Shown piece by piece: positions 39,301 through 59,900 of a stretch of 64,000 nucleotides of DNA (the first letter of the stretch is position 1; the number at the start of each line of letters is the position of its first letter). The position numbers were made by a program, and so were the translations under genes. Origin of the DNA: Trichoplax adhaerens (Eukaryota; Animalia; Placozoa); assembly GCF_000150275.1 (NCBI RefSeq), contig NW_002060959.1, forward strand, positions 1,023,746-1,087,745. Direction: 5' to 3'. The notes beneath the pieces were generated by a model, which was not told the DNA's origin, did no database searches, and saw only the letters and a program-made list of their open reading frames with translations.

Positions 39301-39582
39301 ATCCATATACGGTAAGGGCGAAATAGTTTCTATTTGTTACTAATGTTGCCCTCTGTACTCAAAATAGCATTCTGAATGAAAAGATATAAATATAGTTGAT
39401 AATAATTTTTAAATATTATTCCTGATTCCGTAGGTGTACCTTACAGTGAGCACAGCAGTTATAGTGAGATGAGACGATTCGTACAATTTACGAAGCCCCG
39501 AAAAATTATCCCAACGGTTAATGTTGGTTCGCCTGAGAAAAGACGTGAAATGAATATGATCTTTCAGCAATGGCGGTCTTGA
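36323..39582 (+). CDS. DCLRE1A: DNA cross-link repair 1A (SNM1A/PSO2), MBL/beta-CASP nuclease
   Basis: N-terminal [10 protein letters not shown]; [11 protein letters not shown]|[11 protein letters not shown]; [13 protein letters not shown]; DANHCPG; HTGDFR; LYLDTTYCDP; GTYTIGKEK; FKPTGW; [22 protein letters not shown]. Confidence 0.95.
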
Positions 39583-40319
39583 AATCACGTGGCCCTGATA
39601 AATCGTATTATCGGTTATGCAAATTTTATTATAAAATGTTGTTTGATGTAAAGTCTTGTAAATTTTATTTAGGCGAGTATCGATTAGATAGTATTATAGT
39701 ATGTTTTTAATGTGACGACCGAAGCATTGTAGAACCTGTAAATATTGAAATCGTCACACTGCTACAATTGCAGTGGCGAGGTCGGATGTTCTATACACTT
39801 GCTCACCAGCAACTTTATAAATCAACTGTAGTACAGTGTAATAACTAAGCAGTTTAAGCGATTTATCAATTTTGAACTTTTTACTTTATTACCATGCAAA
39901 ATCAAGATCACATTGTTTCACAGCATTATTTAAAGCGTCACGACCGATACTAATATGCGCAGGACGTATAGCCAAAGAATTATAGCATAGAAATTTTTCC
40001 GCAAGGAAACAAGCACTAAAGCAAATTAATATCATCATTAGTTCTATCAATTGATGGAAATGATATCATTTAATAATTATACATATTGAGAAATTGCAAA
40101 TCGTTTGTAAGCATATCAGAAATTATAAATGCTTTTAAACATTTAGCTAGACTATATTATCAAAAAATCAAGGATGGATAATGTAGGGAGACGAAGCTCA
40201 CAAACCCTACAGCAACGAACAATTTGACTAAGGCAATAGCTAGTGCACATAATCGATGTTCACATAAGCAATCAAATAAACATAATCAATTCTTTATAAA
40301 CCATGTTTCTGTATCATTT

Positions 40320-41804
40320 TTAAGAGCTGAAGCATAATATTAAGCAATTGTATTTAATAAAGGCCAATTTTCCATTGTAATCATAGACTTGGCTTTTTCG
40401 ACAACGGGTGTATCTGCATCGAGGAGACTTGAGCACTGCACTTTCTTTAGCTACATAGATAGCAAATTCAATAGTTTATTATGATATCCTAGCAATAGAA
40501 GGTAGGTGAACCGATTCATTGTCTACTTACTTTTGACTTTGTAGATCTCCGTATCCATACAAAAGCTAAAAAATTCTGGACGCTTTCTGAATCTTCGTGT
40601 CATAACCTCAACTTGTAAACCCTATTAAAAGATTAATAATATAGTATGGGAATTTTGCTGCAATTTAATTGTCAACACGCACCGTATTCAATGTACAATG
40701 CTTCTTACCCCTGTCGACCATAGTTGCAAATTTGATTTTAATGCCATTTCATAAATCTCTTCGCGACTCCAATTCTTGCGCGCTTTCGCAGTAGTAGCCA
40801 TGTTTACGTTTGTGTCGGTTTGATTCTCATTTAAACTTCCATTATTAGTAATATTGAAATTATTTACAATAGTTTTATTTTGTTGTATAGTTTGATTGTT
40901 AAGCATCTCCAAATTTAATAAGTCTCTCATTCGCTTTTTATTAATGCGCCTGTATAGACAATTATCACCAATGTTTACCAGGAAATCGTCCTAAAATGAA
41001 GGTATACATCCAATTATTAGCTAGAACTACAATAGATACTTATCACAAGTACCGGTGGATAGTAGATAATTGCATTTAAAGTGATTCCATTTACAAAGAT
41101 AATGTACAAAGCCTTCCTTAATGCCGACATTAATTCATTAATGATATCAATAATAATCAAGGGTTATCGAAATAAAAGGACCTTTATTATGGTGTGTGCG
41201 GTTAATTGTATCTATTATATCAGTAATGTAATGTAATGTAATAGTAGTGCCTTTGACTAAGCCCGTACAATGAATTATCTGTTTGGTTGATCGCAATTAC
41301 ACATGTGAAGCAAAAACTGTTGAAAAAAAATCTGGCGTATTAATGTTTATTGCTATTTCAAAAACTGTTTGTCATCCATATTCTCGTATATTATAAAGAG
41401 ATACTCTACTACTATTTCGCTAAATCTGCAGTATTATGTTTACTGACATTTAACAAAAAGTAACCCATATAATATACTAAAATTATGGCTCATATAACTT
41501 AGTCTTTTTATGATAACCTGCCTGATTTATCAAGCATCATTTAGTTTAAACACGAACTCAGAGATAGCCCTGCGGTACACATAGAATATATAACGCGAAA
41601 TAAATCATTAAACTATCATTATTACTATCCTGGCTTTAAATTAGAAAATAAAAAACTATAACAATTCCTAACCTTGGCGACATCGATCACAACAAATGCT
41701 CGCCCTATCAATTCGACAGGTTGATGATTTGTAACTGTAGGTCCAGGTAAATTTCTCGCAGAAATTCCGGCAATCAGGAAAAATAACACAATCATAAACT
41801 TCAT
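40320..41804 (-). CDS. Secreted 211-aa BRICHOS-like precursor with C-terminal cationic 4-Cys peptide (exons 41804-41673, 40990-40709, 40621-40531, 40450-40320)
   Basis: Four exons join in frame with GT-AG introns (phases 0, 0, 1). Signal peptide MKFMIVLFFLIAGISA; VVIDVAKDDFLVNIGDNCLYRRI and FSFCMDTEIYKV resemble the two Cys blocks of BRICHOS; tail SPRCRYTRCRKSQVYDYNGKLAFIKYNCLILCFSS*. The gene model is firm; the BRICHOS call is pattern-based. Confidence 0.78.
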
Positions 41805-44526
41805 CTTGAGATAATGTAATAGAGATGAGATAGTCCAAACTATTTATTCTTTTGATCGTTTCTCTTCAACGGAGGGTAAATTATAAATCCGGAAGGGAAA
41901 CCTTGCTGTTTTATACTTTTCTGCTTCAATGACTTTCTATTTATCCGCGCTGACTAACGATTTAAACATGGAATTTTGGGATAAGCAAATTACTATCACA
42001 CTCAATCAATCGGCACCATAAATGATTTATTCACTCTAACACAAAAATACATATGCTTAATATATCGTGAAAGATATGGCATTCTACTATTAAAGTGAGA
42101 TAAATACTGTATCAATTTCTTGCTATTGTAGAAATAAAACGATAAATCTTTATCTATGACGCCAACGTGGTGCCGACATGATTGGCAATGTCTATTGTTA
42201 GCACACTCAATATAAAGTATCAGATGAGTAATTTGCTATTAATAGCGCTGTGTTCCTATTTTTAATATAACGGAAAGAAAGACGGTACATCCATACGTAA
42301 CAAAATAGCAATAAATCCCGCACTTCCTAAAATAGATTTGTTTTCTATATCTTAAAGTGGATATTGCTATCTTTACTTGTTAAGTAGTTAAGTAAAATTT
42401 TTTTGAATACTGTATCCTGTATGCATTTTATTCTTACTGCCATATATAGCTAACAAGCACTAATTGAAGTTGCTATCTACTGTATAATTTCGTTCATCAT
42501 TTCAATTTTATAATTACGCTGATTCTGTTACAATTAAGGTATATTTATTTGACGTTAATATCTGTTAATGTCAATCGATTTCCGCTTGTCATAGCGCAAT
42601 ATAGCTTGTGTATGTTATGCGGTTATTTTGTAATAATCATTAGCCATCATTGATACTCGTATATGTATCTCTCAATCTGTAACATAATCTATGGTGAATA
42701 ATTGTATGAAATACTTAATAATTGAGTTATCAACGTCATCAATTCCTCTCTTACCTTGGATAAATTTAGTTACATTTACACCGTACGTTGTAATTTGGCG
42801 CTAATCTTTAACGATGGCTACTAATTAAGATTACCTATATTATTCCTTGCAGCAGAATTTCGTAACACAAGGAGATCGTTGAATGAATTGATTGTGCTAG
42901 TAAATATAATGCATATTGCTCCTAAAATACATGCTAACTTAGGGCATAGTGCCAATTTCATTCTAGCGCTTAATACAACGATAGTGTCCAAATTTATCGC
43001 GAATTTTAAGTACTGTTAACATATAGCCACTCTGATTTCATAATTTTAATCCATTTCATTGGCCTACCTAACAACTTGAACTAAATTAATAAGTGTTGGT
43101 AGCCAACCATAGGTAGAATGGAAAGCTTTTATCTTACTTCTGTGGTAGATATATTTTCATAATCCCTGTACTTAAAACAGTTTAACCAATAGAAGGCACA
43201 TATGTACCATAGAAATAAAGAAAGATGGTATGATATACAATATATCCTCTTGCTCCTTATTATTATTACAGTGCAATACCACGAATAGGTGGAGTCTTAA
43301 CCATTTAATATTAGCAAACAATTTGTCGATTTATTATAACAGGAAAGATAGACAGTAATTAACTCTTTCAAGATGACACCTACATTGGATCACCTTTTAC
43401 TGCCATTTAAATAAAGCGCATTTATTAAGCTAATACTAGACGACACAGTTTTTACAATTGTCTTTAGACACGCATTAGCTCTACACCTTCAAAGACAATT
43501 TTATGGTAATGAAATTAAAATCTACATGGCTAAGATTGACATTTTTACTTACAAGAACTAAATATCGAGATGACTTATTAAGTGCCTGAATTTGTAGAAA
43601 TATTTGATAATTTATTCGTTAAGGTAATCAAAATGTTGCACTGAAATTTGGAACCTCATAAAATTGTGCTTAGTTCCTTTAAATTTCTAACATGAGTGAT
43701 TATATTAATGTACGAGTATGAGATAGAAGTACTGTAACTTCTGTGAACTACAGTAAACTGATATGTTAATCTAAGATTAATGCTAATCGCAATCAGAATG
43801 AGCTCAGTATTGCCATATTCAGCAACATACGTTTTTGATTTTCCATGAATCGAAAATAATAATATACTCTCCCTTCCTGTTAATCGCTACCTCTCTTATT
43901 TAAAACTTTTGGAATACGCAATTTCAAATATTTTAAATATTGTGTTAACGTCGATATTACATTAACTAACAGTCGTCGGTTTCCTAAACTGACTCGATGA
44001 TAGGTTTCGCTAATTGTCTTTCAAGGTATAAAGAGACTAGTTGTAATTCGAATAAAAAAAAATTGTAAGGAAATTGCAATATGCATCATATTTAGTAGTA
44101 TATAATGTAAAAATAATGGCGGACTCTAGCAATTATTAGTTGTTTACTAGGTATCTTAATAACTATAATAACTTCCCGCTTTTGTACGTAAGCTAAACTA
44201 GGATAATACTTGTAGATAGAATAATTTAGGTACTTTTATTACATCATGAGACGGCTAACTTTGTGATGATTTATCTTTTGTTATGTTAATGCTTAAATTA
44301 TGCTAATTTGACTGATGATCTAATTCCCCATATACATTCAAGGCTAATTAATATAGTCGAATAGATTCTTGACCAGCTATAGGATTGGAAAACCTGTATA
44401 GCTTTAACACAGAAATTATCCTCAATGATTTCCGTTCTTTATTCCAAGTTATAGTAGATGATTGAATTGTGCTCTCATTGATTATTTTTGATATAACGAC
44501 TGCATATATATATGAAGCCCTAAAAC

Positions 44527-47500
44527 ATGGGTAATCGATCTTTCAAGTCTACTATACGTATACCTCAACAAATTAAATCCCTCTTTGAAAAAGCTATAGA
44601 AAATCATCAATCCGGCAACCTTAATGAAGCCTTATCCAATTGTATACGAGTTTTGGATAAAATCCAAGCTACATCCCGGAGTACTATTGATCTTAATCGG
44701 ATGCGATGTGAGATTTATCTTCTTGTTGGCGATATATATATACAACAAAGTGAATGGATAAAAGCTAAAGAATTCAATGAAAAAGGACAAGAAATGGCCG
44801 AAAAGCTGCAAGAAAATGTAATCATTGTCCGATGCTTAGATCAACAAGGTGATATTCAAAAGGTGCAAGGAGATTTGAAGGGGGCATCGGATAATTATGC
44901 TAAATCATTGAGTATAAAGTTAAATTATTTAGGCAAGGAAGACCTAGATGTCAGTAATTCATATGACCGGATAGGAAATATACATTATGCTCAATGCAGA
45001 TATGACGAGGCTCTCTCTATGCATGAAAAATCACTCAAAATTCGATTATCAGCCCTTGGTCACAATCATTCTGATGTGGCTAAATCTTATAGCAATATTG
45101 GAGAAAGCTATTGGGAACAGAGTAAATATGAAGAGGCTATTTGTATGCATGAGAAATCGCTCAAAATTCGATTATCAGTTTTTGGCCTTAATCATCCTGA
45201 TGTTGCTACATCATATAATAACTTGGGAAATGTCCAGGCTGATCAAGGCAAGCAGAAAGAGGCCATTTCTATGTATGAGAAGTCGCTCAAAATTCGCTTG
45301 CAAGTTCTTGGTCATAATCACTTCGCTGTTGCTCAATCATACAATAATTTAGGAAATATCTATGCTGATCAAGGTAAGTATGAAGAGGCTATATCTATGT
45401 TTGAGAAATCACTCCAAATTCGATTGTCGATTTTTGGTCATAATCATGCAGATGTTGCTACATCATATAACAACTTGGGAACTATATTTTATGATCAGGG
45501 CAAGCATGAAAAGGCTCTCTCTATGTATGAGAAGTCTCTCAAAATTCGATTGTCAGTCCTTTGTAGCAATCATCTCGATGTTGCCCAATCGTATAACAAT
45601 ATCGGTCTTATATATGGTGATCAAGGCAAGCACGAAGAAGCTATTTTTATGTATGAGAAATCACTTAAAATTCGATTATCAGCTCTAGGTCATAATCATT
45701 GTGTCGTTGCTCAATCGCACAATAACCTGGGAAATGTCTTTGCAGATCAGGGCAAGCATGAAGAAGCTATTTCTATGTATGAGAAATCGCTTAAAATTCG
45801 ATTATCACTTCTAGGTCCTAATCATGTTGCTGTTGCTACATCATATAATGATGTGGGAACTATATATTGTGATCAAGGAAAATACGACGAGGCCATTTCT
45901 ACGTTTGAGAAATCAGTCAAAATTCAGCTGTCAGTTCTTGGTCCTAATCATCCTACTATAGCTCAATCCTATAACAACATCGGAAATGTATATTCTCATC
46001 AAGATAGGCACGAAGAAGCTATTTCCATGTATGAAAAGTCACTCAAAATTAATTTACTAGTCTTTGGTCACAATCATATAAGTGTTGCTGCATCATATAA
46101 TAACATGGGGAATGTCTTTAAAAATCAGAGCAAGTATAATGAAGCGGTCACTATGTATGAGAAATCGCTCAAAATTCAACTTTCAAACTTTGGTCACGAT
46201 CATCCCGATATTGCTTCATTATATAATAACATGGGGAATGTCTATGCTGATCAGGAGAAGCATGAAGAAGCGATTTCCATGTATGAGAAGTCACTTAAAG
46301 TTCGATTATCAATCCTTGAGAACAATCATCCCGATATTGCTGCATCCTATAATAACATTGGGGTCGTTTATAGGAAGCAGACTAAATATGAAGAAGCTAT
46401 TTCCATGTTTGAGAAATCGCTCGAAATACAATCATCAGCCCTGGGTTACAATCATCCTGAAGTTGCCAAATCCTATAGCAACATGGGAAAAGTTTATTGG
46501 AAGCAGAGTAAATATGAAAATGCCATATCTATGTATGAGAAATCACTCAAAATTCGATTGTCAACTCTTGGTAGCAATCATTCTGAAGTTGCCAAATCAT
46601 ATGACGACCTGGGAGAAGTCTATAGGAAGCAAAGTAAGTCTATGGAGGCTCTTTCTATGTACGAAAAGTCGCTCAAAATCCGATTATCAGTTTTTGGTCA
46701 CAATCATCCTGCTTCCGCTCAGTCATATAACAACATTGGACTAGCATATTGTGATCAAGGCAAGCATGAAGAGGCCATTTCTATGTATGAGAAATCACTT
46801 AAAATTCAATTATCAGTCCTTAATCATAATCATCCTGATATTGCTATGGCTTACGGAAACCTAGGAATTGCCTATTCTCTCCAGGCCAAATATGAAGAGG
46901 CTATTTCTATGTATAAGAAATCGCTCGAACTTCAATTGTTAGCCTTTGGTACTAATCATCCCGATGTTGCCAAAACATATAACAACATGGGAACCGTCTA
47001 TAGTGATCAGGGAAAGTATGAGGAGGCAATTTCTATGTATAATAAGTCACTCAAGATTAAGTTATCAATCTTTGATCACAATCATCCCGAAGTTGATAAA
47101 TTATACAACAACATGGGGATTGTATATTTTCATCAAGATAAGCATGTAGAAGCCATTCGTATATTTGAAAAATGCCTCAAGATTGTTCTATTGATCTTTG
47201 GCCATAATCATGAACGCGTTGCTGCAACTTATAATAATATGGGAAATGTCTACAAAAACCAAGGCAAATATGAAGAAGCTATTTCTATGTATGAAAAGTC
47301 ACTTAAAATACAAATGTCAGTTCTAGATCATAATCATCCTGATGTTGCTGCATCATACAATAACATGGGAAATGCCTATAAAAATCAGGGCAAGCATGAA
47401 GAAGCTATTGCTATGTATGAGAAGTCTCTTAAAATTCGGTCATTAGTACTTAGCCACAACCATCCTGATATTGCGGCATTATATGACAACATAGGAATTG

Positions 47501-48714
47501 TATACTCTTGTCAAGGTAAATATGAGAAAGCTAATTCTGCGCTTGAGAAGTCACTTAAAATTCGATTATCAGTCTATGATAGCAAGCATCCCGATATTGC
47601 AGCATCCTACAACAACATGGGCGAAGTCTACAGGCAGCAGAGCAAACATAAAGAGGCCATTTCTATGTTTGAAAAGTCACTCAAAATTCGACTATCTGTC
47701 CTTGGTGACAATCATTGCGATACTGCTGCTTCCTATAATAACATAGGAGAAGTCTATTGGAATCAGGGTAACCACGAAGAGGCTATTTATATGCATGAGA
47801 AGTCGCTCGAAATTAGATTGTCAGTTCTTGGTTGCAACCATTCCGATGTTGCTCAATCCTATAATAACATTGGCCTTGTATATTATGATCAGGGCAACTA
47901 TGAAGAGGCTTTACCTATGTACCAGAAGTCACTTAAAATTCGATTATCAGTCCTTGGTCACGAACATTCCGCTGTGGCCCAATCATATAACAATATTGGA
48001 GCTGTTTACTATGCTCAAGGAAATCATGAAGAGGCTCTATCAATGTATGAGAAGTCACTTAAAATTCGATTATCTGTTCAAAGCCACAATCATCCTGATG
48101 TTGCCCAATCATATAATAACATCGGCTTTATATATTGCAATCAGGGCAGGCATGATGAGGCTCTATCTATGTACGAAAAGTCACTTGAAATTCGATTATT
48201 AATCCTTGATGATAATCATCCCGCTATTGCCCAGTCATATGACAACATAGGAAATTTATATGATGATCAGGGCAAGGATGAAGAAGCGATTCCTATGTAT
48301 GAAAAATCACTCAAAATTCGATTATCGGTCCTTAAAGATAATTATCCCGACGTCGCTGCATCACAGAATGTAAGAACTGTGCGCTTTCGTCAGAGCAAAC
48401 ATGAACGGGCTATTTCTTGGTATGAGAAATCACTCGAAAATAAAGTGTCTGCTCTTGATCAAAATCACCCCGATACTGCGATGTCATACAGGAATCTTGG
48501 AAATATCTATTCTCGCCAGTGCAGGCATGAAGAGGCTATATCTATGTACGAAAAATTACTCAGAATTCAATTATCAGACTTAGGTCACAATCATCCACAA
48601 GTCGCAATATTATATTACAAGATAGGAAGTGTCTACGATAGCCAGGGCATGTATGATGAGGCCCTATCAATGTATGAGAAATCATTTGAAATTTTATCAT
48701 CGCAATCATCATAA
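44527..48714 (+). CDS. Single-exon tetratricopeptide-repeat protein, 1395 aa, ~30 42-aa repeats (kinesin light chain/nephrocystin-3-type TPR)
   Basis: Uninterrupted ORF with consensus HPDVAxSYNNxGxVYxxQGKxEEAISMYEKSLKIRLSxLGxN. Confidence 0.95.
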   Translation: MGNRSFKSTIRIPQQIKSLFEKAIENHQSGNLNEALSNCIRVLDKIQATSRSTIDLNRMRCEIYLLVGDIYIQQSEWIKAKEFNEKGQEMAEKLQENVIIVRCLDQQGDIQKVQGDLKGASDNYAKSLSIKLNYLGKEDLDVSNSYDRIGNIHYAQCRYDEALSMHEKSLKIRLSALGHNHSDVAKSYSNIGESYWEQSKYEEAICMHEKSLKIRLSVFGLNHPDVATSYNNLGNVQADQGKQKEAISMYEKSLKIRLQVLGHNHFAVAQSYNNLGNIYADQGKYEEAISMFEKSLQIRLSIFGHNHADVATSYNNLGTIFYDQGKHEKALSMYEKSLKIRLSVLCSNHLDVAQSYNNIGLIYGDQGKHEEAIFMYEKSLKIRLSALGHNHCVVAQSHNNLGNVFADQGKHEEAISMYEKSLKIRLSLLGPNHVAVATSYNDVGTIYCDQGKYDEAISTFEKSVKIQLSVLGPNHPTIAQSYNNIGNVYSHQDRHEEAISMYEKSLKINLLVFGHNHISVAASYNNMGNVFKNQSKYNEAVTMYEKSLKIQLSNFGHDHPDIASLYNNMGNVYADQEKHEEAISMYEKSLKVRLSILENNHPDIAASYNNIGVVYRKQTKYEEAISMFEKSLEIQSSALGYNHPEVAKSYSNMGKVYWKQSKYENAISMYEKSLKIRLSTLGSNHSEVAKSYDDLGEVYRKQSKSMEALSMYEKSLKIRLSVFGHNHPASAQSYNNIGLAYCDQGKHEEAISMYEKSLKIQLSVLNHNHPDIAMAYGNLGIAYSLQAKYEEAISMYKKSLELQLLAFGTNHPDVAKTYNNMGTVYSDQGKYEEAISMYNKSLKIKLSIFDHNHPEVDKLYNNMGIVYFHQDKHVEAIRIFEKCLKIVLLIFGHNHERVAATYNNMGNVYKNQGKYEEAISMYEKSLKIQMSVLDHNHPDVAASYNNMGNAYKNQGKHEEAIAMYEKSLKIRSLVLSHNHPDIAALYDNIGIVYSCQGKYEKANSALEKSLKIRLSVYDSKHPDIAASYNNMGEVYRQQSKHKEAISMFEKSLKIRLSVLGDNHCDTAASYNNIGEVYWNQGNHEEAIYMHEKSLEIRLSVLGCNHSDVAQSYNNIGLVYYDQGNYEEALPMYQKSLKIRLSVLGHEHSAVAQSYNNIGAVYYAQGNHEEALSMYEKSLKIRLSVQSHNHPDVAQSYNNIGFIYCNQGRHDEALSMYEKSLEIRLLILDDNHPAIAQSYDNIGNLYDDQGKDEEAIPMYEKSLKIRLSVLKDNYPDVAASQNVRTVRFRQSKHERAISWYEKSLENKVSALDQNHPDTAMSYRNLGNIYSRQCRHEEAISMYEKLLRIQLSDLGHNHPQVAILYYKIGSVYDSQGMYDEALSMYEKSFEILSSQSS

Positions 48715-50906: not shown

Positions 50907-53900
50907 TCAGATAATACAATCTCCAGTTTGGGCAACCTATCTTATTACTTCGAAGTATCATCTAGGTTAACACTTTATTTTTAAAATTGCGCCCATTCTG
51001 AGTAAGGTAAAAATCGAACTTTTACCTCCACCATTCCACGCAGTAATCTTTCCAGACGTTGCATGTCATCTTCTTTGGATGAAATATTGAAACGTTGGAC
51101 TTTAAAATTATGAATTTCAGTCACTTGGTGTGAATGAGTGATGCGTTCTGACTTAACTTCTGAATAGACTGCATCGGCTATTAACGGTGCAGCCACCGCG
51201 GGTAAAGCTTCTTCCATGGGTTGAACGTCCGCTTTTAAATTATCTCCTATAGATCGAATCTTTGGACCTTTTACTTCAAAATGACCAATTTTACCTACTT
51301 GATATGAAGCTGCAGCGGGTTCTGGATAAGCTGCATCGGCTATTAAAGGTGCAGCCACCGCGGGTAAAGCTTCTTCCATGGGTTGAACGTCCGCTTTTAA
51401 ATCATCTTCTACAGATCGAATCTTTGGACCTTTTACTTCAAAATGACCAATTTTACCTACTTGATATGAAGCTGCAACGGGTTCTGCATGAGCTGCATCG
51501 GCTATTAAGGGTACAGCCACCGCGGGTTGAACATCCGCTTTCAAGTTATCTTCCATAGATCGAATCTTTGGACCCTTTACTTCAAAATGACCAATTTTAC
51601 CTACTTGATATGAAGCTGCAACGGGTTCTGCATGAGCTGCATCGGCTATTAAAGGTACAGCCACCACGGGTAAAGCTTTTTCCATGGGTTGAACGTCTGC
51701 TTTTAAATCATCTTCTACAGATCGAATCTTTGGACCTTTTACTTCAAAATGACCAATTTTACCTACTTGATATGAAGCTGCAACGGGTTCTGCATGAGCT
51801 GCATCGGCTATTAAAGGTACAGCCACCACGGGTAAAGCTTCTTCCATGGGTTGAACGTCCGCTTTTAAATCATCTTCTACAGATCGAATCTTTGGACCCT
51901 TTACTTCAAAATGACCAATTTCAGCTGCTTGATTTGAAGCTGCAACGGGTTCTGGATTAGCTGCACCGGCTATTAACGGTATGGCTGCCACAGGGAAAGA
52001 CTCCTTCGTATATTGAACTTCCGCTTTCATATTATCTACATTTTCAGAACAGACTAACTCTGAAATTTCGGATAATGACTGTATGCTACTGTACGGCTAA
52101 TATATTGGCAACTATATATCTAGATTTATCATCAGATTGCACTATGACTGTATTTATATCGCCAATGTGATAGCTAACGATACCTGTCTGGATTTCCGAA
52201 TGTAGCTTGAAGTCCATATCAGGAACGTGATGATCTCCATCGATACTCGGAATATCGGGCTTCTCTAGGCTAATATTACCATCTAAGATATAAATTTTAC
52301 TAACGTCAGTATTATCGTTGACAGACAAACTTGCTTATCGTAAATTGAATCAATAACATACTAACCTGGCATTACTCCTGGTAAAATTTCACCGCTACCC
52401 ACATCAAATTGACCATCCCTTGGAGATTCTTCTGGTTCTGCTTCTTTGGAATTTATTCGGGTAATCTACAAAAGTGTTAATAATACTTTAGTTATCATAT
52501 TACTTCTAATGCAATCCACACTGTTAGCACGACATGTCTGCATTTAATTATTTGCCAGTTGAACGGTATTTATCTAACTCGAGATTAGCGATTGCATTAA
52601 AAATCTGTAATTAAATAATAATTATAAATTACATATCGGTATTACTATCGGTTTACAAATGCACCTTTCTAAAGAAACGACTAGCTAGTTTTGAGATTGA
52701 GACTCTTGTTTTCTTTGTTTTATCGATGCCTAATTTTAGATCATCTTCAGTTGGTTCGGTCTGTTCTTCATATTCTACCGGTATGCCATATTCAACTGCT
52801 TCTATATCAGCATCTGCGACCATATCTGGAATTAGCAAGCTATTTGTTGCTTGAGGTGAAGGAACACTTTTTGTAACTTCTGTAGTATATAGTTGATCTC
52901 AATTAGCATTAATGTCATTTCCCATATCAGAATTAACATTAGGTTTAACACTAGCATTTGCCAATTTCCTGCTTTACCTGTTTCGTATCTTGTAACACTT
53001 TTCAATTGTAGAGCACTACTTTCAACAGAAACCTACAAATTACAGTAAAAACACGATTGCCAATAATATTTAACTCATCACATGATTTAGTTCATCATAC
53101 TTATTCATCCATTTTTTAAATTCATACCCCAAACTCCAATTTAGACGGCTCCATTTCAGGCATATTAACTGACATCTTTTTCGCACTCGAAAATTTGCTA
53201 GAAGCACTTGAACTTGATGCTTTAGATGAACTCGATGATGTTGAGGATGTCCTGCTGTAAACACGTGACGAGAGTATTCCTGGACGTTCTTTCTCTTCTC
53301 TATCCAGTAAACTAAAATCAATCTTGACTGGAATTGGTTTATCTGCAGGAGCTATTTCATCTTCATGTTGTAGTGGTAACACTTCAATATCCATGTTGTT
53401 GTCCTTATCTGGTAATTCTTCTGGTAAATTTATAGTTATTTCTGGTTCTAGAATCAGATCATCAGGTACTTCTTCTACTGTTCTATCTTCAGTTTGATTA
53501 ATCTCTTCTTCTACTATTTCATTTGGTTCTTCTCTATCAAATATACTGAAATCAATCTTAACCGGTAAAGATTTAGTATCTGGAGCAATTTCCAATTCCA
53601 TTTCTTGCGTCGATTCCATATCGTCGCCAGGCATTTTATATTGGAGGTCGAGATCTTTCGGTACTTCAGCCGTAACATTGAAGTTAGTACTTAAGGTTGG
53701 TTCTACAATTCTTGTAGGCTGTTCAGGCTTGTTAAAATCGTCTTTATCTGGTAAGCCTGCGGACAGTCCAAAAGCTATTTCTGGTCGGAAATTCATTTCG
53801 TCAGGTACGTCTTCTACTTTCATATCTCCTATAGGACTAGTTCCTTCTTCTACAATTCCAGTAGGCTGTTCAGGCTTGTTAAAATCGTCTTTATCTGGTA

Positions 53901-56900
53901 AGTCTGCGGACAGTCCAAAAGTTATTTCTGGTCGGAAATTTATTTCGTCAGGTACATCTTCTGCTTTTATATCTCCTATAGGACTAATTCCTTCTTCTAC
54001 AATTCCAGTAGGCTGTTCCGGCTTGTTAAAAGCAATGCCTAAGTTTGGTTCTTGAGGTCGAGCAAGGATTGCTGTATCGAAATCGTTCGGTGTATCTGGT
54101 TTATCTTCTTCTTTAATTGTTGCTAAACCGGCCATATCTGGTCTCTCTATTGGCTCAGCATCGATTTCGATATCGAGCTTAGGTCTTTCATGACTTAAAG
54201 CTCCTAACACTCCTATTGTAGGAATAGCTTGAGGTACTACGTTTTCAGGTTGATTTTCTTCATCTGATTTAATCTACATATAATATAGAGTACGTGCAAT
54301 ATGAAATATATATTTATACAGTATTATACTTTCATAGTTACGTAGCTATTTAACGTAACGGGTTTAAATCAATTTAATTACCGGAGCTTGTTCGTCTTTA
54401 TCATCGATTTTCTTAGGCTTTTTCTAGCGAGAATAAAATAACATTTAATAATGAATACACCTAGACACATATTACGAGTACGCTTACGCATAAGTATTTA
54501 AACTTACGGTAAGGACGAGACGTTTAGCTTTCTTTCCTAGTTTTTTCATTCTTTTAACAATTTTACGTTGTCGTCGTTTTTTATCCTTGTATACTGGATA
54601 AGATAATTCTCCCGCATATATTACTTCGCCTGTTTCTGGTACGACAATTTTACCTCTTCTATCTACTTCATTTTCATCTTCAGTAGAAGTACCTCCATCA
54701 GATTCAGTCGTAGCATCGGTCGATAATACGCTATCTCTTTGAGGGCTCAAATTTATATCGCTTTCATATTTTGGCAAGTTCATCTAATCAGTAAATATCA
54801 AATAATAAAACAATTAATTATTAGTTCATATAGTATATCAAAGTATACTTCTTATAACACGCCAAGATAACTATATAAGAATATGTTAAGAAAGGTTAAA
54901 TTATTTACTATTATACTGTACGTACAAGTAAATAAATATTAAAAGTATCACATACTCGTATTATTTACATTCATATTGAGATTTAGTGTTAATTCTAGTT
55001 TTACCTCAACATCAAAATCTGGAGACTTTGGCTGATCTTCTATTTCAAGGTTAGCACTAAAGTCTGGTATTGCAGCGGCCGCAGCGATTTCTCCTTCATC
55101 GATTGACGGCTGTGGAAGTACATCAGGTTGTTCGTATTCTTGCACGCTCTTTAATTCCGGAGCTTGCATTTCAGCAGAAACCTACAAAATAAGTAAGGTA
55201 AACACTATTGTAATTGATGTCTAAGTTTCTTATGCGTACCTGATAAACTTTACGTGCATCTATTCTAGCTATAGTTATACTGTATATTATCATACCCCGA
55301 ACTCTAATTCAGGTGGCTTTATCTCAGGTGTATTTACAAACATTCTTTCCGCACTCGATGATTTACTAGAAGTACTTGAATTGGATTCCTCGGATGAGCT
55401 TGACGATGTCGACGATGTTCGACTACCAGAAATACGTAGCGGTGGTATTTCTGGATAAGTTATCTCTTCTTGTGGTACATCTTTAATATGAGCATCTACT
55501 CCAGGTAAAGTTTGTTGTACTTCATATGCCATACCAATTTGTAGCGCTGTCTCTGTTTCTGCTCTATATTCATACGATGTCGAAAACTTAGTCATGCTTA
55601 TATTGGTTGCTACTGTAGTGTTTCTTTCGGTATGAATAATTGATGTTCCTTCTTTGTTAATATCATCTACATGCTGTAAATGCCAGTTTCTCGTATCTAT
55701 ATCGTCTTTACTTGGTAAACCTACGGGTAAGCCAAAAGTTATTTCTGGTCGGAAATTCGTTTCGTCAGGTACATCTTCTGCTTTCATATCTTCTATAGGA
55801 CTAATTCCTTCTTCTACAATTCCAGTAGGCTGTTCAGGCTTGTTAAAATCGTCTTTATCTGGTAAGCCTGCGGACAGTCCAAAAGTTATTTCTGGTCGGA
55901 AATTCATTTCGTCAGGTACATCTTCTACTTTCATATCTTCTATAGGACTAGTTCCTTCTTCTACAATTCCAGTAGGCTGTTCAGGCTTGTTAAAATCGTC
56001 TTTATCTGGTAAGTCTGCGGACAGTCCAAAAGTTATTTCTGGTCGGAAATTCATTTCGTCAGGTACATCTTCTACTTTCATATCTCCTATAGGACTAGTT
56101 CCTTCTTCTACAATTCCAGTAGGCTGTTCAGGCTTGTTAAAATCGTCTTTATCTGGTAAGCCTGCGGATAGTCCAAAAGTTATTTCTGGTCGGAAATTCA
56201 TTTCGTCAGGTACATCTTCTGCTTTCATATCTTCTATAGGACTAGTTCCTTCTTCTACAATTCCAGTAGGCTGTTCAGGCTTGTTAAAATCGTCTTTATC
56301 TGGTAAGCCTGCGGACAGTCCAAAAGCTATTTCTGGTCGGAAATTTATTTCGTCAGGTACATCTTCTGCTTTCATATCTTCTATAGGACTAGTTCCTTCT
56401 TCTACAATTCCAGTAGGCTGTTCAGGCTTGTTAAAATCGTCTTTATCTGGTAAGCTTGCGGACAGTTCTAAAGCTATTTCTGGTCGGAAATTTATTTCGT
56501 CAGGTACATCTTCTGCTTTCATATCTTCTATAGGACTAGTTCCTTCTTCTACAATTCCAGTAGGCTGTTCCGGCTTGTTAAAAGCAATGCCTAAGTTTGG
56601 TTCTTGAGGTCGAGCAAGGATTGCTGTATCGAAGTCGTTCGGTATATCTGGTTTATCTTCTTCTTTAATTGTTGCTAAACCGGCCATATCTGGTCTCTCT
56701 ATTGGCTCAGCATCGATTTCGATATCGAGCTTAGGTCTTTCATGACTTAAAGCTCCTATCACTCCTATTGTAGGAATAGCTTGAGGTACTACGTTTTCAG
56801 GTTGATTTTCTTCATCTGATTTAATCTACAAATGAATATAGAATACGTGCAATATGATATATATGTATACAGTATTATACTTTCATAGTTACGTAGCTAT

Positions 56901-59900
56901 TTAACGTAACGGGTTTAAATCAATTTAATTACCGGAGCTTGTTCGTCTTTATCATCGATTTTCTTAGGCTTTTTCTAGCGAGAATAAAATAACATTTAAT
57001 AATGAATACTCCTAGACACGTATTACGAGTACGCTTACGCATAAGTATTTAAACTTACAGTAACGACAAGATGTTTAGCTTTCTTTCCTAGTTTTTTCAT
57101 TCTTTTAACAATTTTACGTTGTCGTCGTTTTTTATCCTTGTATACTGGATAAGATAATTCTCCCGCATATATTACTTCGCCTGTTTCTGGTACGACAATT
57201 TTACCTCTTCTATCTACTTCATTTTCATCTTCAGTAGAAGTACCTCCATCAGATTCAGTCGTAGCATCGGTCGATAATACACTATCTCTTTGAGGGCTCA
57301 AATTTATATCGCTTTCATATTTTGGCAAGTTCATCTAATCAGTAAACGTCAAATAGTAAAGAAATCAATTATTACTATATTCTGTTGCAGTATATGTAAG
57401 CAATTATATGATATACGTATCATGTATGTATCTATTTCCGGTTATAGTAATCATACCTCAAATTCTAATTCAGGTGGTTTCATCTCAGGTGTATCAACTG
57501 ACATTCCTTCCGCATTTGAAGCTTTGTTGGAATCACTCGAACTTGATGATGTTGATGAGGTTCTGCTAGCAGAACTACGAGGAGATGGTATTTCTTCATC
57601 TAGTAAACTAAAATCAATCTTGACTGGAATTGGTTTATCTGCAGGAGCTATTTCATCTTCATGTTGTAGTGGTAACACTTCAATATCCATGTTGTTGTCC
57701 TTATCTGGTAATTCTTCTGGTAAATTTATAGTTATTTCTGGTTCTAGAATCAGATCATCAGGTACTTCTTCTACTGTTCTATCTTCAGTTTGATTAACCT
57801 CTTCTTCTACTATTTCATTTGGTTCTTCTCTATCAAATATACTGAAATCAATCTTAACCGGTAAAGATTTAGTATCTGGAGCAATTTCCAATTCCATTTC
57901 TTGCGTCGATTCCATATCGTCGCCAGGCATTTTATATTGGAGGTCGAGATCTTTCGGTACTTCAGCCGTAACATTGAAGTTAGTACTTAAGGTTGGTTCT
58001 ACAATTCTTGTAGGCTGTTCAGGCTTGTTAAAATCGTCTTTATCTGGTAAGCCTGCGGACAGTCCAAAAGCTATTTCTGGTCGGTAATTTATTTCGTTAG
58101 ATACATCTTCTACTTTCATATCTTCTATAGGACTAGTTCCTTCTTCTACAATTCCAGTAGGCTGTTCAGGCTTGTTAAAATCGTCTTTATCTGGTAAGTC
58201 TGCAGACAGTCCAAAAGCTATTTCTGGTCGGAAATTTATTTCGTCAGGTACGTCTTCTGCTTTCATATCTTCTATAGGACTAGTTCCTTCTTCTACAATT
58301 CCAGTAGGCTGTTCCGGCTTATTAAAAGCAATGCCTAAGTTTGGTTCTTGAGGTCGAGCAAGGATTGCTGTATCAAAATCGTTCGGTATATCTGGTTTAT
58401 CTTCTTCTTTAATTGTTGCTAAACCGGCCATATCTGGTCTCTCTATTGGCTCAGCATCGATTTCGATATCGAGCTTAGGTCTTTCATGACTTAAAGCTCC
58501 TATCACTCCTATTGTAGGAATAGCTTGAGGTACTACGTTTTCAGGTTGATTTTCTTCATCTGATTTAATCTACATATAATATAGAATACGTGCAATATGA
58601 GATATATATGAATATACAGTATTATACTTTCATAGTTACGTAGCTATTTAACGTAACGGGTTTAAATCAATTTAATTACCGGAGCTTGTTCGTCTTTATC
58701 ATCGATTTTCTTAGGCTTTTTCTAGCGAGAATAAAATAACATTTAATAATGAATACACCTAGACACGTATTACGAGTACGCTTACGCATAAGTATTTAAA
58801 CTTACAGTAACGACAAGATGTTTAGCTTTCTTTCCTAGTTTTTTCATTCTTTTAACAATTTTACGTTGTCGTCGTTTTTTATCCTTGTATACTGGATAAG
58901 ATAATTCTCCCGCATATATTACTTCGCCTGTTTCTGGTACGACAATTTTACCTCTTCTATCTACTTCATTTTCATCTTCAGTAGAAGTACCTCCATCAGA
59001 TTCAGTCGTAGCATCGGTCGATAATACACTATCTCTTTGAGGGCTCAAATTCATATCATTTTCATATTTTGGCAAATTCACCTGATCAGTAACATTAAAT
59101 TAATAGGATAAATAATAAAATTAGGGCTTTTAATGTAAGTAAATTCGCTATCGTACTAGTAAAATATAAAATTAACGTACTAAAGCATTGAAAGCACATC
59201 GCACACTATTTATATTGTAAATGTTAAAATTTCTCCATAATTTATAGTATTTCTAATAAAACTGGTTGATGGAAAGGTAGCACAGAGTAACTTTCATCCA
59301 TTCTATAAAAATTTGGCATCGGTATTAAAGTAACGTTTTTGTAACCAACTATTTCAAACAAGACAATAGTTACTTTTATAAAATGGAATTGAAGCTGAAT
59401 AATTCTATAGTATAGCTATACTACCTCATAGGAAGTTTCTGGCATCAGTTCATGATCAGGTTGAGTTAGTTGACTAGGGTTTTCTGTTGTTATCTCTAGT
59501 GCGACAGGTTCCATCTCAGGCATTTCCACTTCTTCTGCCATGATAGAATCGTTTAAAGTTATTAAGTAATACATTAACTTATTATAGTTGATTCTAAACG
59601 ATCATGAAATTGCAGAGCCAACTAGTAAACTAGCTAACAATATACTTGCCTTGTGCATCAGGAGAGAACTCTTGCCCAAAAGCAAAGCTTGCTTGAAGTT
59701 CTGGTAAAGGTGCTTTTTCTGCATTCACTTCTGGTAATTCTGGCTGAGATGCAACTAACTGTTCAGGACTTACTTCTAAATCTGGTTTATCCAAAGTTTC
59801 CACTTCGCCCTCTATCGACGGATGTTGCAATTGGTCTTCCATATCAAAGTTGTCACTAAAGTCTGGAATAACAACAGCTGCAGAAAGTGCTCCTTCGATA

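What the first reader, a model, noticed from the sequence alone, without database searches (positions are those of the whole stretch)
40320..41804. Hidden BRICHOS-like prepropeptide ending in a cationic disulfide beta-hairpin: candidate antimicrobial peptide system
Seen: four exons splice into a signal peptide, a domain with an Asp and two Cys blocks (VVID..GDNCLYRRI; FSFCMDTEIYKV) around an Asn-rich loop with several NxS/T sites, and a 35-aa tail SPRCRYTRCRKSQVYDYNGKLAFIKYNCLILCFSS. The tail has 7 K/R and 1 D. Cys9 and Cys28 are exactly symmetric about a central Asn-Gly turn, and Cys4/Cys32 nearly so, which is the geometry of a two-disulfide hairpin. Known: annelid arenicin, alvinellacin and capitellacin are beta-hairpin antimicrobial peptides released from BRICHOS precursors, where BRICHOS chaperones the aggregation-prone C-terminus. 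As I recall them, alvinellacin contains CYTRC and capitellacin starts with SPR. Inference: a BRICHOS-chaperoned host-defence or amyloid-prone peptide in a non-bilaterian animal.
Basis: partly seen in the sequence, partly recalled or inferred. Interest (0 to 1): 0.88.

Follow-up and report, generated by a model that had tools for sequence, protein, structure and literature searches.

The report
Placozoan secreted protein with cysteine-stapled hairpin tail
This is a real, expressed Trichoplax gene for a small secreted glycoprotein whose last exon encodes a positively charged, disulfide-stapled beta-hairpin. Its layout resembles BRICHOS peptide precursors, but neither BRICHOS membership nor antimicrobial activity could be shown.

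Summary
The Trichoplax sp. H2 annotation has the same model (TrispH2_005031). The T. adhaerens model (TRIADDRAFT_60778) has a wrong last exon, so the tail is missing there.

The exon-4 peptide folds alone into a confident long beta-hairpin (pLDDT 83).

The BRICHOS reading is neither proven nor excluded.
- For: the four-part BRICHOS precursor layout; Asp/Cys spacing like ITM2A once the 45-residue Asn-rich loop is discounted; BRICHOS and OAF clusters as nearest neighbours by protein language model features (scores 0.77-0.84, a lead only).
- Against: no Pfam BRICHOS match; no score above shuffles against real Trichoplax BRICHOS exons; an insignificant hhalign result.
- The full-length model was too poor (pLDDT 36) to test the fold.

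There is no dibasic cleavage site before the tail and no acidic pro-region. No relatives turned up outside Trichoplax H1/H2, and there are no paralogues. Antimicrobial function is untested.

The parts
41805..41995 (-). 5' untranslated part of exon 1 (at least this long)
   Evidence: The X6 contig covers 41672-41995 without a break (table 8).
41673..41804 (-). Exon 1 coding part, 44 codons: start codon, signal-like segment, linker and first strand ending VVIDVAK (candidate BRICHOS Asp at residue 41). The intron that follows is phase 0.
   Evidence: Translation. Joint 40989/41672 (cut +1) with GT..AG ends in X6 and X7.
41757..41804 (-). Predicted signal peptide, about 16-17 residues (hydrophobic core, then ISA before RN)
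   Evidence: Read from the sequence. AF2 makes residues 4-12 a helix. No signal-peptide predictor was available.
40991..41672 (-). Intron 1 (682 bases, GT..AG)
   Evidence: Skipped in contigs of X6 and X7 (table 5).
40709..40990 (-). Exon 2, 94 codons: DDFLVNIGDNCLYRRI (Cys55), a helical stretch, the Asn-rich loop and a second helix
   Evidence: Translation. Contigs of X6, X7 and X11. 100% match to P0001 and 97% to P0002.
40769..40903 (-). Asn-rich loop, residues about 74-118, with six NxS/T sequons here (seven in H2). It holds all three amino-acid differences between H1 and H2.
40622..40708 (-). Intron 2 (87 bases, GT..AG)
   Evidence: Skipped in X6, X7 and X11.
40531..40621 (-). Exon 3, 30 codons plus 1 base: RRFRKR basic cluster, then PEFFSFCMDTEIYKVK (Cys159). 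The intron that follows is phase 1.
   Evidence: Translation; joints.
40451..40530 (-). Intron 3 (80 bases, GT..AG)
   Evidence: Skipped in X6, X7 and X11.
40320..40450 (-). Exon 4 coding part: 2 bases completing a Thr codon, 42 codons and the stop (40322-40320)
   Evidence: Translation; joint 40450/40531; identical tail in P0002.
40323..40427 (-).
   Evidence: Counts. AF2 on the exon-4 peptide gives mean pLDDT 83, with strands at 11-13, 17-22, 28-34 and 37-39 of 42.
39881..40319 (-). 3' untranslated region, about 440 bases. AATAAA on the minus strand lies at 39890-39885. The region contains the spurious last exon of the public model TRIADDRAFT_60778 (about 40050-39889).
   Evidence: Contigs run without a break from 40450 to 39881 (X7) or further (X6). 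Sequence. P0001 and its ORF.

Best explanation
This is a single-copy, expressed, four-exon Trichoplax gene for a secreted N-glycoprotein of about 211 residues, built like a very divergent BRICHOS precursor.

After a signal peptide of about 16 residues and a short linker comes a domain of about 150 residues. It starts with three short strands carrying an Asp (41) and a Cys (55). It continues with helices interrupted by a 45-residue Asn-rich, multiply glycosylated loop. It ends with a second Cys (159) followed by a strand (EIYKV). Cys55 and Cys159 would form the domain's single disulfide.

The last exon encodes a 42-residue basic end that folds into a long beta-hairpin, with one Arg/Lys-rich strand and one hydrophobic strand. 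Two nested disulfides would staple it: Cys185-Cys204 in register, and Cys180-Cys208 through a one-residue bulge.

The proposed mechanism is as follows. In the secretory pathway the domain shields the sticky hydrophobic strand of the hairpin, as BRICHOS domains do for their beta-prone C-terminal peptides. Outside the cell the hairpin is the working part. Host defence at the feeding epithelium is the likeliest role, either after release by a non-dibasic cleavage or while still attached.

Shown: the gene, its splicing, its expression, its restriction to Trichoplax H1/H2, the sequence features, and a confident hairpin prediction. Inferred: BRICHOS homology, disulfide pairing, chaperoning, cleavage and activity.
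For: - Splicing and expression: joints in three runs from three studies. The same model is annotated in Trichoplax sp. H2.
- Layout: a hydrophobic start, a linker, a domain with only two cysteines and a beta-prone Cys-rich end. This is the four-part pattern given for BRICHOS precursors in PMC4002450, PMC9714404 and PMC11767717.
- Spacing: PMC2751770 gives the only strictly conserved superfamily residues as D144, C160 and C219 in human ITM2A, plus a C-terminal Cys pair C244/C261. That is spacings of 16, 59, 25 and 17. Here D41, C55, C159, C185 and C204 give 14, 104, 26 and 19. The 45 extra residues equal the Asn-rich loop. [quoted passage not shown]
- Secondary-structure order in the weak AF2 model is strands, helices, loop, helix, strands. 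This is compatible with 'three short strands, then two helices'.
- Nearest named clusters by language-model features are all BRICHOS or OAF: 0.83 with 178 shared features, 0.81 with 175, and 0.80. With the domain alone (residues 23-172), BRICHOS scores 0.77.
- Hairpin: AF2 on the exon-4 peptide alone gives mean pLDDT 83, and all five models score 72-83. The same two strands appear in the full-length model.
Against: - No Pfam BRICHOS or OAF hit at E<=10 on the exons or on the full-length H2 orthologue. The whole-genome BRICHOS scan hits three other loci but not this one.
- Real Trichoplax BRICHOS exons reach E of about 1e-3 on their own. Profiles built from them score this protein below most shuffles. 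hhalign gives probability 0.85%.
- MAFFT aligns those exons with an 'invariant' Asp and Cys at two different places in the protein, depending on the input. The Asp/Cys motif is therefore cheap.
- The language-model scores are below 0.9, which the tool calls a lead only.
- The full-length model (pLDDT 36) gives meaningless fold matches. The docking test gave no answer.
- No dibasic site stands before the tail (the sequence runs VLK then SPR). The only basic cluster, RRFRKR followed by Pro, lies before Cys159.
- The pro-region has net charge +3, not acidic.
- The hairpin is about twice as long as known annelid hairpin peptides and has one nearly all-hydrophobic strand. That suits a strand packed against the protein as well as it suits a free peptide.
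- Intron 1 lies three residues after the Asp. In the three real BRICHOS genes an intron lies just before it.
Confidence: 0.45

Rival explanations
1. This is a Trichoplax-restricted orphan secreted glycoprotein with no BRICHOS ancestry. The C-terminal hairpin is a fixed structural part whose hydrophobic strand packs on the body of the protein. It is never released, and the protein serves in mucus, adhesion or extracellular digestion.
For: - All formal homology tests are negative.
- Only two relatives, both Trichoplax, turned up among 1.8 billion representatives, and there are no paralogues.
- No processing site precedes the tail, and the pro-region is basic.
- One strand of the hairpin is almost entirely hydrophobic.
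- Heavy predicted N-glycosylation is typical of extracellular structural or mucus proteins.
Against: - The nearest language-model neighbours are consistently BRICHOS or OAF rather than a mix of families.
- The Asp/Cys spacing fits the published pattern once the loop is discounted.
- The tail is a separate exon, and AF2 folds it confidently on its own.
Confidence: 0.35
2. This is a precursor of a signalling peptide or small protein hormone. A convertase cuts after the RRFRKR cluster. This gives a 59-residue, five-cysteine C-terminal product, possibly held to the N-terminal chain through Cys55-Cys159, that acts on other cells of the animal.
For: - RRFRKR is the only strong basic cluster in the protein.
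- Placozoans rely on many secreted peptides for behaviour (abstracts of PMC10580291 and 10.1101/360925).
- The gene has a signal peptide and is expressed.
Against: - Pro directly follows the cluster, which is generally unfavourable for convertases (own knowledge).
- There is no C-terminal Gly for amidation and there are no repeated peptide copies.
- The gene is absent from the placozoan peptide and cell-atlas papers and supplements I could search.
- The product would have an odd number of cysteines.
Confidence: 0.12
3. The model is an artefact: the transcript is non-coding, or the true reading frame ends elsewhere, as in the public T. adhaerens model with a different last exon.
For: The public model TRIADDRAFT_60778 uses another last exon. 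H1 and H2 are too close (98-99% identical in exons, introns and UTRs alike) to show purifying selection.
Against: - No contig supports the alternative joint; all three spliced runs join 40531 to 40450.
- All four runs and the H2 genome carry 4 extra bases at 39982-39984 inside the alternative exon, which would shift its frame.
- The three introns keep one open frame of 211 codons with a signal peptide.
- The single difference in exon 4 between H1 and H2 is synonymous.
Confidence: 0.03

Closest known systems
BRICHOS-related beta-hairpin antimicrobial peptide precursors of annelids (arenicin, alvinellacin, capitellacin, HfBRI peptides)
   Same: - A signal peptide, then a pro-region of about 150 residues with two cysteines, then a cationic C-terminal peptide. 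Here that peptide is predicted to be a disulfide-stapled two-stranded sheet with nested C1-C4 and C2-C3 pairing, as determined for alvinellacin.
- Total length is about 200-240 residues.
- The last intron is in phase 1 and the others are in phase 0, as reported for the alvinellacin gene. This is a weak coincidence.
   Different: - Their pro-regions are recognised by Pfam as BRICHOS and are about 33% identical to each other. This one is not recognised and has no detectable similarity to anything outside Trichoplax.
- They have a Lys/Arg-Arg site before the peptide. This protein has none.
- Nicomicin precursors are described with an acidic pro-region. Here the net charge is +3.
- Known hairpins are about 20-25 residues. 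This one is 35-42, with an 18-residue span between the inner cysteines and one hydrophobic strand.
- In the 2025 review read here, BRICHOS-related antimicrobial peptides are described only from annelids, including Urechis.
ITM2/Bri2-type BRICHOS proteins (C-terminal 23-residue peptide released by furin)
   Same: The order and spacing of the conserved Asp, the two domain cysteines and a C-terminal cysteine pair are similar. ITM2A has 16/59/25/17; this protein has 14/104/26/19, with 45 extra residues in a loop. The C-terminal peptide is beta-prone and bridged by cysteines.
   Different: - ITM2 proteins are type II membrane proteins with a furin site. This protein has a cleavable-looking signal peptide and no furin site.
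- It has two extra cysteines in the tail.
- There is no sequence match by HMMER to any solved BRICHOS chain.
Secreted BRICHOS relatives found only by structure (OAF; gastrokines)
   Same: These have a signal peptide rather than a membrane anchor and a central disordered segment. OAF escaped sequence profiles and was recognised through AlphaFold models and HHpred. OAF clusters are among this protein's nearest language-model neighbours.
   Different: There is no Pfam OAF_N or OAF_C match. No usable model could be made here to repeat that kind of structural argument.
Known or proposed placozoan antimicrobial peptides (trichoplaxins; arminin-like AMP1-4 of Trichoplax)
   Same: Same animal. The arminin-like genes encode secreted precursors of about 150-250 residues with a basic C-terminal part containing aliphatic residues.
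   Different: Trichoplaxins are alpha-helical. [quoted passage not shown] This protein has none of these and has a four-cysteine hairpin instead. It is not mentioned in that paper.

Membership tests
BRICHOS superfamily (Pfam PF04089) | Significant match to the family profile | tested here: not met
   - No BRICHOS hit at E<=10 for the four exons or for the full-length H2 orthologue and the H1 public model.
- The PF04089 scan of the whole genome hits three other loci, not this one.
- Real Trichoplax BRICHOS exons of 32-33 residues reach E of about 1e-3.
BRICHOS superfamily (Pfam PF04089) | The three strictly conserved residues (one Asp, two Cys) in the right order and spacing (PMC2751770) | tested here: inconclusive
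   D41, C55 and C159 are present in order, with spacing 14 and 104 against 16 and 59 in ITM2A. The excess equals the 45-residue loop. The alignment has no statistical support: mini-profiles score below shuffles, hhalign probability is 0.85%, and MAFFT finds an 'invariant' Asp/Cys at two different places.
BRICHOS superfamily (Pfam PF04089) | Four-part architecture: hydrophobic start, linker, domain, beta-prone C-terminal region | tested here: met
   Sequence. The C-terminal exon is predicted as a confident hairpin. The pattern is as described in PMC4002450 and PMC11767717.
BRICHOS superfamily (Pfam PF04089) | BRICHOS fold: a five-stranded sheet with two helices, and a disulfide between strand 4 and the short helix (PMC9714404) | tested here: inconclusive
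   The single-sequence AF2 model has mean pLDDT 36. The Atlas and PDB fold searches give only TM of about 0.3 or E>0.2 to unrelated folds. No alignment depth is obtainable, because only two near-identical sequences exist.
BRICHOS superfamily (Pfam PF04089) | Domain binds its own C-terminal peptide (face A) | tested here: inconclusive
   The docking job of residues 18-172 against 177-211 gave 'no answer', score 0.00. This is not evidence either way.
[quoted passage not shown] | Dibasic convertase site between the domain and the peptide | tested here: not met
   The residues before the tail are KVKTKESAVLK, with no KR, RR or RxxR. The only cluster, RRFRKR then Pro, lies 25 residues further up, before Cys159. 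The feature is described.
[quoted passage not shown] | Cationic C-terminal hairpin with one or two disulfides | tested here: met
   Net charge +6, with four cysteines placed for nested pairing. The hairpin is predicted at pLDDT 83. This is a prediction only; the disulfides are not shown.
[quoted passage not shown] | Antimicrobial or membrane activity of the mature peptide | not testable with these tools
   This needs synthesis or expression and MIC and membrane assays.
Arminin-like putative antimicrobial peptides of Trichoplax | Highly acidic N-terminal region, DE cleavage motifs, C-terminal Gly for amidation (PMC12013895) | tested here: not met
   The pro-region has net charge +3, and the protein ends in Phe-Ser-Ser. 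The features are listed.

The most novel reading that the evidence does not exclude
A placozoan makes a BRICHOS-chaperoned, two-disulfide beta-hairpin host-defence peptide. This would be the first such system outside annelids and the first cysteine-stabilised antimicrobial peptide of Placozoa. Either the pairing of a BRICHOS chaperone with a hairpin effector predates Bilateria, or it arose twice. Release would be by a non-dibasic route.
Probability: 0.15. Interest if true: 0.75.

Novelty: new variant of a known kind. Interest (0 to 1): 0.42.

Why it matters
If the BRICHOS reading and a defence role are right, the chaperone-plus-hairpin design known from lugworms and vent worms would extend to one of the simplest animals. 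Only helical trichoplaxins and unproven arminin-like genes are on record there as antimicrobial peptides. That would give a tractable natural pair, a domain and its sticky client, for studying how BRICHOS domains handle aggregation-prone peptides.

Two results stand even without that. The T. adhaerens reference annotation of this gene is wrong at its 3' end. The correct product is a lineage-restricted secreted protein with a well-defined hairpin module that can be made and tested directly.

Tried and rejected
- **Exon-by-exon Pfam scan:** only noise (DUF3616 at E 0.1, Vir1p).
- **Full-length Pfam and PDB sequence searches with the H2 orthologue:** nothing.
- **Exon-4 peptide against PDB sequences:** one chance hit at E 2.
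- **L005 BRICHOS exon against PDB sequences:** nothing.
- **Homologue searches:** exon 2 against 1.84 billion representatives and the H2 protein against 5.8 billion proteins found only the two Trichoplax models. JGI metagenome contigs gave none.
- **Fetching genuine BRICHOS proteins by reference:** I queried with alignments that included real Trichoplax BRICHOS exons. A proper HHpred-type comparison with a BRICHOS family alignment could therefore not be run.
- **Fold searches with the poor full-length model:** meaningless.
- **Fold search with the hairpin model:** only generic hairpins such as the STING lid.
- **Complex prediction, domain against tail:** no answer; it is not used as evidence.
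- **H1 against H2 DNA comparison:** 98-99% identity in exons, introns and UTRs alike, so there is no selection signal.
- **Literature:** no paper or supplement I could search names TRIADDRAFT_60778 or TrispH2_005031. The 2018 cell-atlas paper is not held. One paper search was badly framed and useless.
- **Rejected idea:** that the tail is a truncated second BRICHOS start (VYDY...C, with the canonical 16-residue Asp-Cys spacing). hhalign P-value is 0.065, Pfam is silent on it, and the stop codon is the same in H1 and H2.
- **Rejected idea:** a CaaX or GPI reading of the C-terminus. The protein is luminal, and the hydrophobic run is only six residues.

Full report
**Source and method.** Earlier notes of this scan name the genome as Trichoplax adhaerens. 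I confirmed this: exon 2 of the gene is 100% identical to the NCBI protein TRIADDRAFT_60778 of that species. Exons were searched one by one, by reference. Whole-protein searches used the public orthologue from Trichoplax sp. H2 (P0002, TrispH2_005031). It has the same 211-residue model and differs from the window's product at only three residues of exon 2 (A109S, A114T, K116E). The one read-laying run used 3,501 letters.

**The observation.** The gene lies on the minus strand.
- Contigs of three runs from three studies (X6, X7 and the RNA-Seq run X11) skip 40451-40530 and 40622-40708. X6 and X7 also skip 40991-41672. Each skipped stretch has GT..AG ends on the minus strand.
- This gives exon 1 at 41995-41673 (ATG at 41804), exon 2 at 40990-40709, exon 3 at 40621-40531, and exon 4 from 40450, with the stop at 40322-40320. 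Intron phases are 0, 0 and 1, and the product has 211 codons.
- The transcript runs on to about 39881, just past an AATAAA at 39890-39885.
- The gene is single-copy. All four exons match only this locus in the 105-Mb assembly.

**The public T. adhaerens model is wrong at its end.** P0001 (219 aa) replaces exon 4 by an open frame at about 40050-39889. No contig supports that joint, and the stretch lies inside the continuous 3' UTR (table 8). All four runs and the H2 genome carry four extra bases at 39982-39984, which would break that frame (table 4). So the tail is 'hidden' in the reference annotation but correctly annotated, as a hypothetical protein, in H2.

**Features of the protein (P0002 numbering).**
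- A hydrophobic start with a plausible cleavage after Ile-Ser-Ala (residue 16).
- Only six cysteines: 55, 159, 180, 185, 204 and 208.
- Seven NxS/T sequons between residues 76 and 119 (six in the window's copy), in a stretch that is 25% Asn.
- A pro-region of net charge +3.
- A basic cluster, RRFRKR followed by Pro, at residues 147-153.
- Cys185 and Cys204 are exactly symmetric about Asn194-Gly195. Cys180 and Cys208 are one position off.

**The hairpin.** Folded alone and without an alignment, the 42-residue exon-4 peptide gives mean pLDDT 83, and the five models score 72-83. Strands lie at 11-13 and 17-22, a five-residue turn at Asp-Tyr-Asn-Gly-Lys, and strands at 28-34 and 37-39. The breaks at residues 14-16 and 35-36 are where a bulge would absorb the one-residue asymmetry of the outer cysteines. 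The poor full-length model shows the same two strands. One strand is Arg/Lys-rich and the other almost wholly hydrophobic. Structure and sequence searches with this piece found only generic hairpins or chance matches. The hairpin is therefore a supported prediction. The disulfide pairing is inferred.

**Formal tests of BRICHOS membership are negative or uninformative.**
- Pfam finds no BRICHOS or OAF on the exons or the full-length proteins at E<=10.
- The PF04089 scan of the whole genome finds three other loci (L004, L005, L006) but not this one. Those single exons of 32-33 residues reach E of about 1e-3 by themselves.
- Profiles built from these genuine Trichoplax BRICHOS exons score the protein at -5.8 to -0.7 bits. 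Between 2,104 and 3,556 of 5,000 shuffles score the same or higher.
- hhalign gives probability 0.85%, and its best local alignment is to the tail (VYDY...C), not to the Asp41-Cys55 block.
- MAFFT lines the BRICHOS exons up with an 'invariant' Asp and Cys either at 41/55 or at 192/208, depending on which exons are given. This shows how little an Asp-plus-Cys coincidence is worth.
- The single-sequence AlphaFold model has pLDDT 36, and its fold matches are noise. No deeper alignment can be made, because only the H1 and H2 proteins exist in the searched collections.
- The docking test of domain against tail gave no answer.

**Leads in favour of BRICHOS.**
- The four-part layout (hydrophobic start, linker, two-cysteine domain, beta-prone Cys-bridged end) is the one given as common to almost all BRICHOS proteins.
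- PMC2751770 states that only D144, C160 and C219 (ITM2A numbering) are invariant in the superfamily, with a further Cys pair, C244/C261, in the C-terminal region of most families. It predicts three short strands followed by two helices, and a central disordered segment in some families. Here the corresponding spacings are 14, 104, 26 and 19, against 16, 59, 25 and 17. The 45 surplus residues equal the Asn-rich loop. This fit was made after the fact, with some freedom of choice.
- The nearest named clusters by language-model features are all BRICHOS or OAF: 0.83, 0.81 and 0.80 for the whole protein, with 175-178 shared features, and 0.77 for residues 23-172 alone. The tool rates scores under 0.9 as leads only.
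- OAF itself was recognised as BRICHOS through AlphaFold models and HHpred rather than through sequence profiles. A Pfam miss is therefore not decisive.

I put the chance of a true BRICHOS-type fold at about one half.

**The antimicrobial reading.**
- What fits: the cationic, cysteine-stapled hairpin and its position on its own last exon, after a phase-1 intron, as reported for alvinellacin.
- What does not fit:
  - The annelid precursors have a Lys/Arg-Arg site before the peptide, and nicomicin precursors have an acidic pro-region. This protein has neither.
  - The hairpin is much longer than known ones, and its hydrophobic strand could equally be packed against the protein.
Such short matches carry no weight.
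- A 2025 review names trichoplaxins as the only known placozoan antimicrobial peptide family. It describes BRICHOS-related peptides only from annelids. Another 2025 paper proposes arminin-like peptides in Trichoplax with quite different features and does not mention this gene.

**Verdict.** The best reading, at about 0.45, is a very divergent BRICHOS-like secreted precursor whose last exon makes a disulfide-stapled beta-hairpin. An unrelated orphan secreted glycoprotein with a built-in hairpin is nearly as likely, at about 0.35. A defence function is possible but untested, about 0.15 for the full BRICHOS-plus-antimicrobial story. The decisive steps are orthologues from other placozoan genera, a confident structure, cell-type expression, and peptidomics and assays of the tail.

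Noticed in passing
window 39889-40050 (minus strand) and 39982-39984: The public model TRIADDRAFT_60778 ends in an open frame inside the RNA-supported 3' UTR. All four runs laid, and the H2 genome, have 4 extra bases (G and TCC) at 39982-39984 relative to the window. This is either a reference assembly error or a strain difference, and it would shift that frame.
   Followed up: yes
window 39433-39582 (plus strand): This is the last coding exon of the convergent neighbour, a DRMBL-domain (SNM1/Artemis-type) gene of 688 aa in the H2 annotation. It has an acceptor at 39431-39432 and a stop at about 39580-39582. Its 3' UTR meets the 3' UTR of the hairpin gene near 39881, so one RNA contig (X6, 4,046 nt) runs through both genes.
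   Followed up: partly
window 39828 and 39880: Strain-dependent insertions in the 3' UTR. There is a 16-base insertion after 39828 in X6 and X11. There is a 12-base insertion (TTTATTACTTTA) after 39880 in X6, X11 and the H2 genome, which duplicates the unit carrying the minus-strand AATAAA signal.
   Followed up: partly
G000:C1399:195968-196066 (L005), C1410:5947415-5947531 (L004), C1402:1164851-1164961 (L006): These are three exons elsewhere in the genome that Pfam recognises as the N-terminal half of BRICHOS (for L004 and L005, E of about 1e-3 for 32-33 residues; L006, 15 bits, appears only in the genome scan). Trichoplax therefore has canonical BRICHOS genes. Their public protein models could not be fetched in the 116-369 aa length range.
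   Followed up: partly
window 40323-40388 (minus strand; residues 190-211): The hairpin's turn region reads VYDY-NG-KLAFIK, with a Cys 16 residues after the Asp. hhalign and MAFFT align this with the start of real BRICHOS domains (IFDYQQNIV...C). The match is not significant (P-value 0.065). It could hint that the tail arose from, or mimics, the first hairpin of a BRICHOS domain.
   Followed up: partly
window 44527-48714 (plus strand): A single uninterrupted open frame of 1,395 aa made of about 30 tetratricopeptide-like repeats of 42 residues (consensus like EAISMYEKSLKIRLSVLGHNHPDVAQSYNNIG). The same gene flanks the locus in H2.
   Followed up: no
window 50981-58506 (minus strand): A tandem group of long open frames (349, 362, 490 and 351 aa). 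The three at 53122-58506 share an N-terminus and repeats of about 42 residues beginning NKPEQPTGIVEEG. The one at 50981-52030 has a different repeat. All are acidic with Ser-rich ends, and look like a lineage-specific repeat-protein cluster.
   Followed up: no
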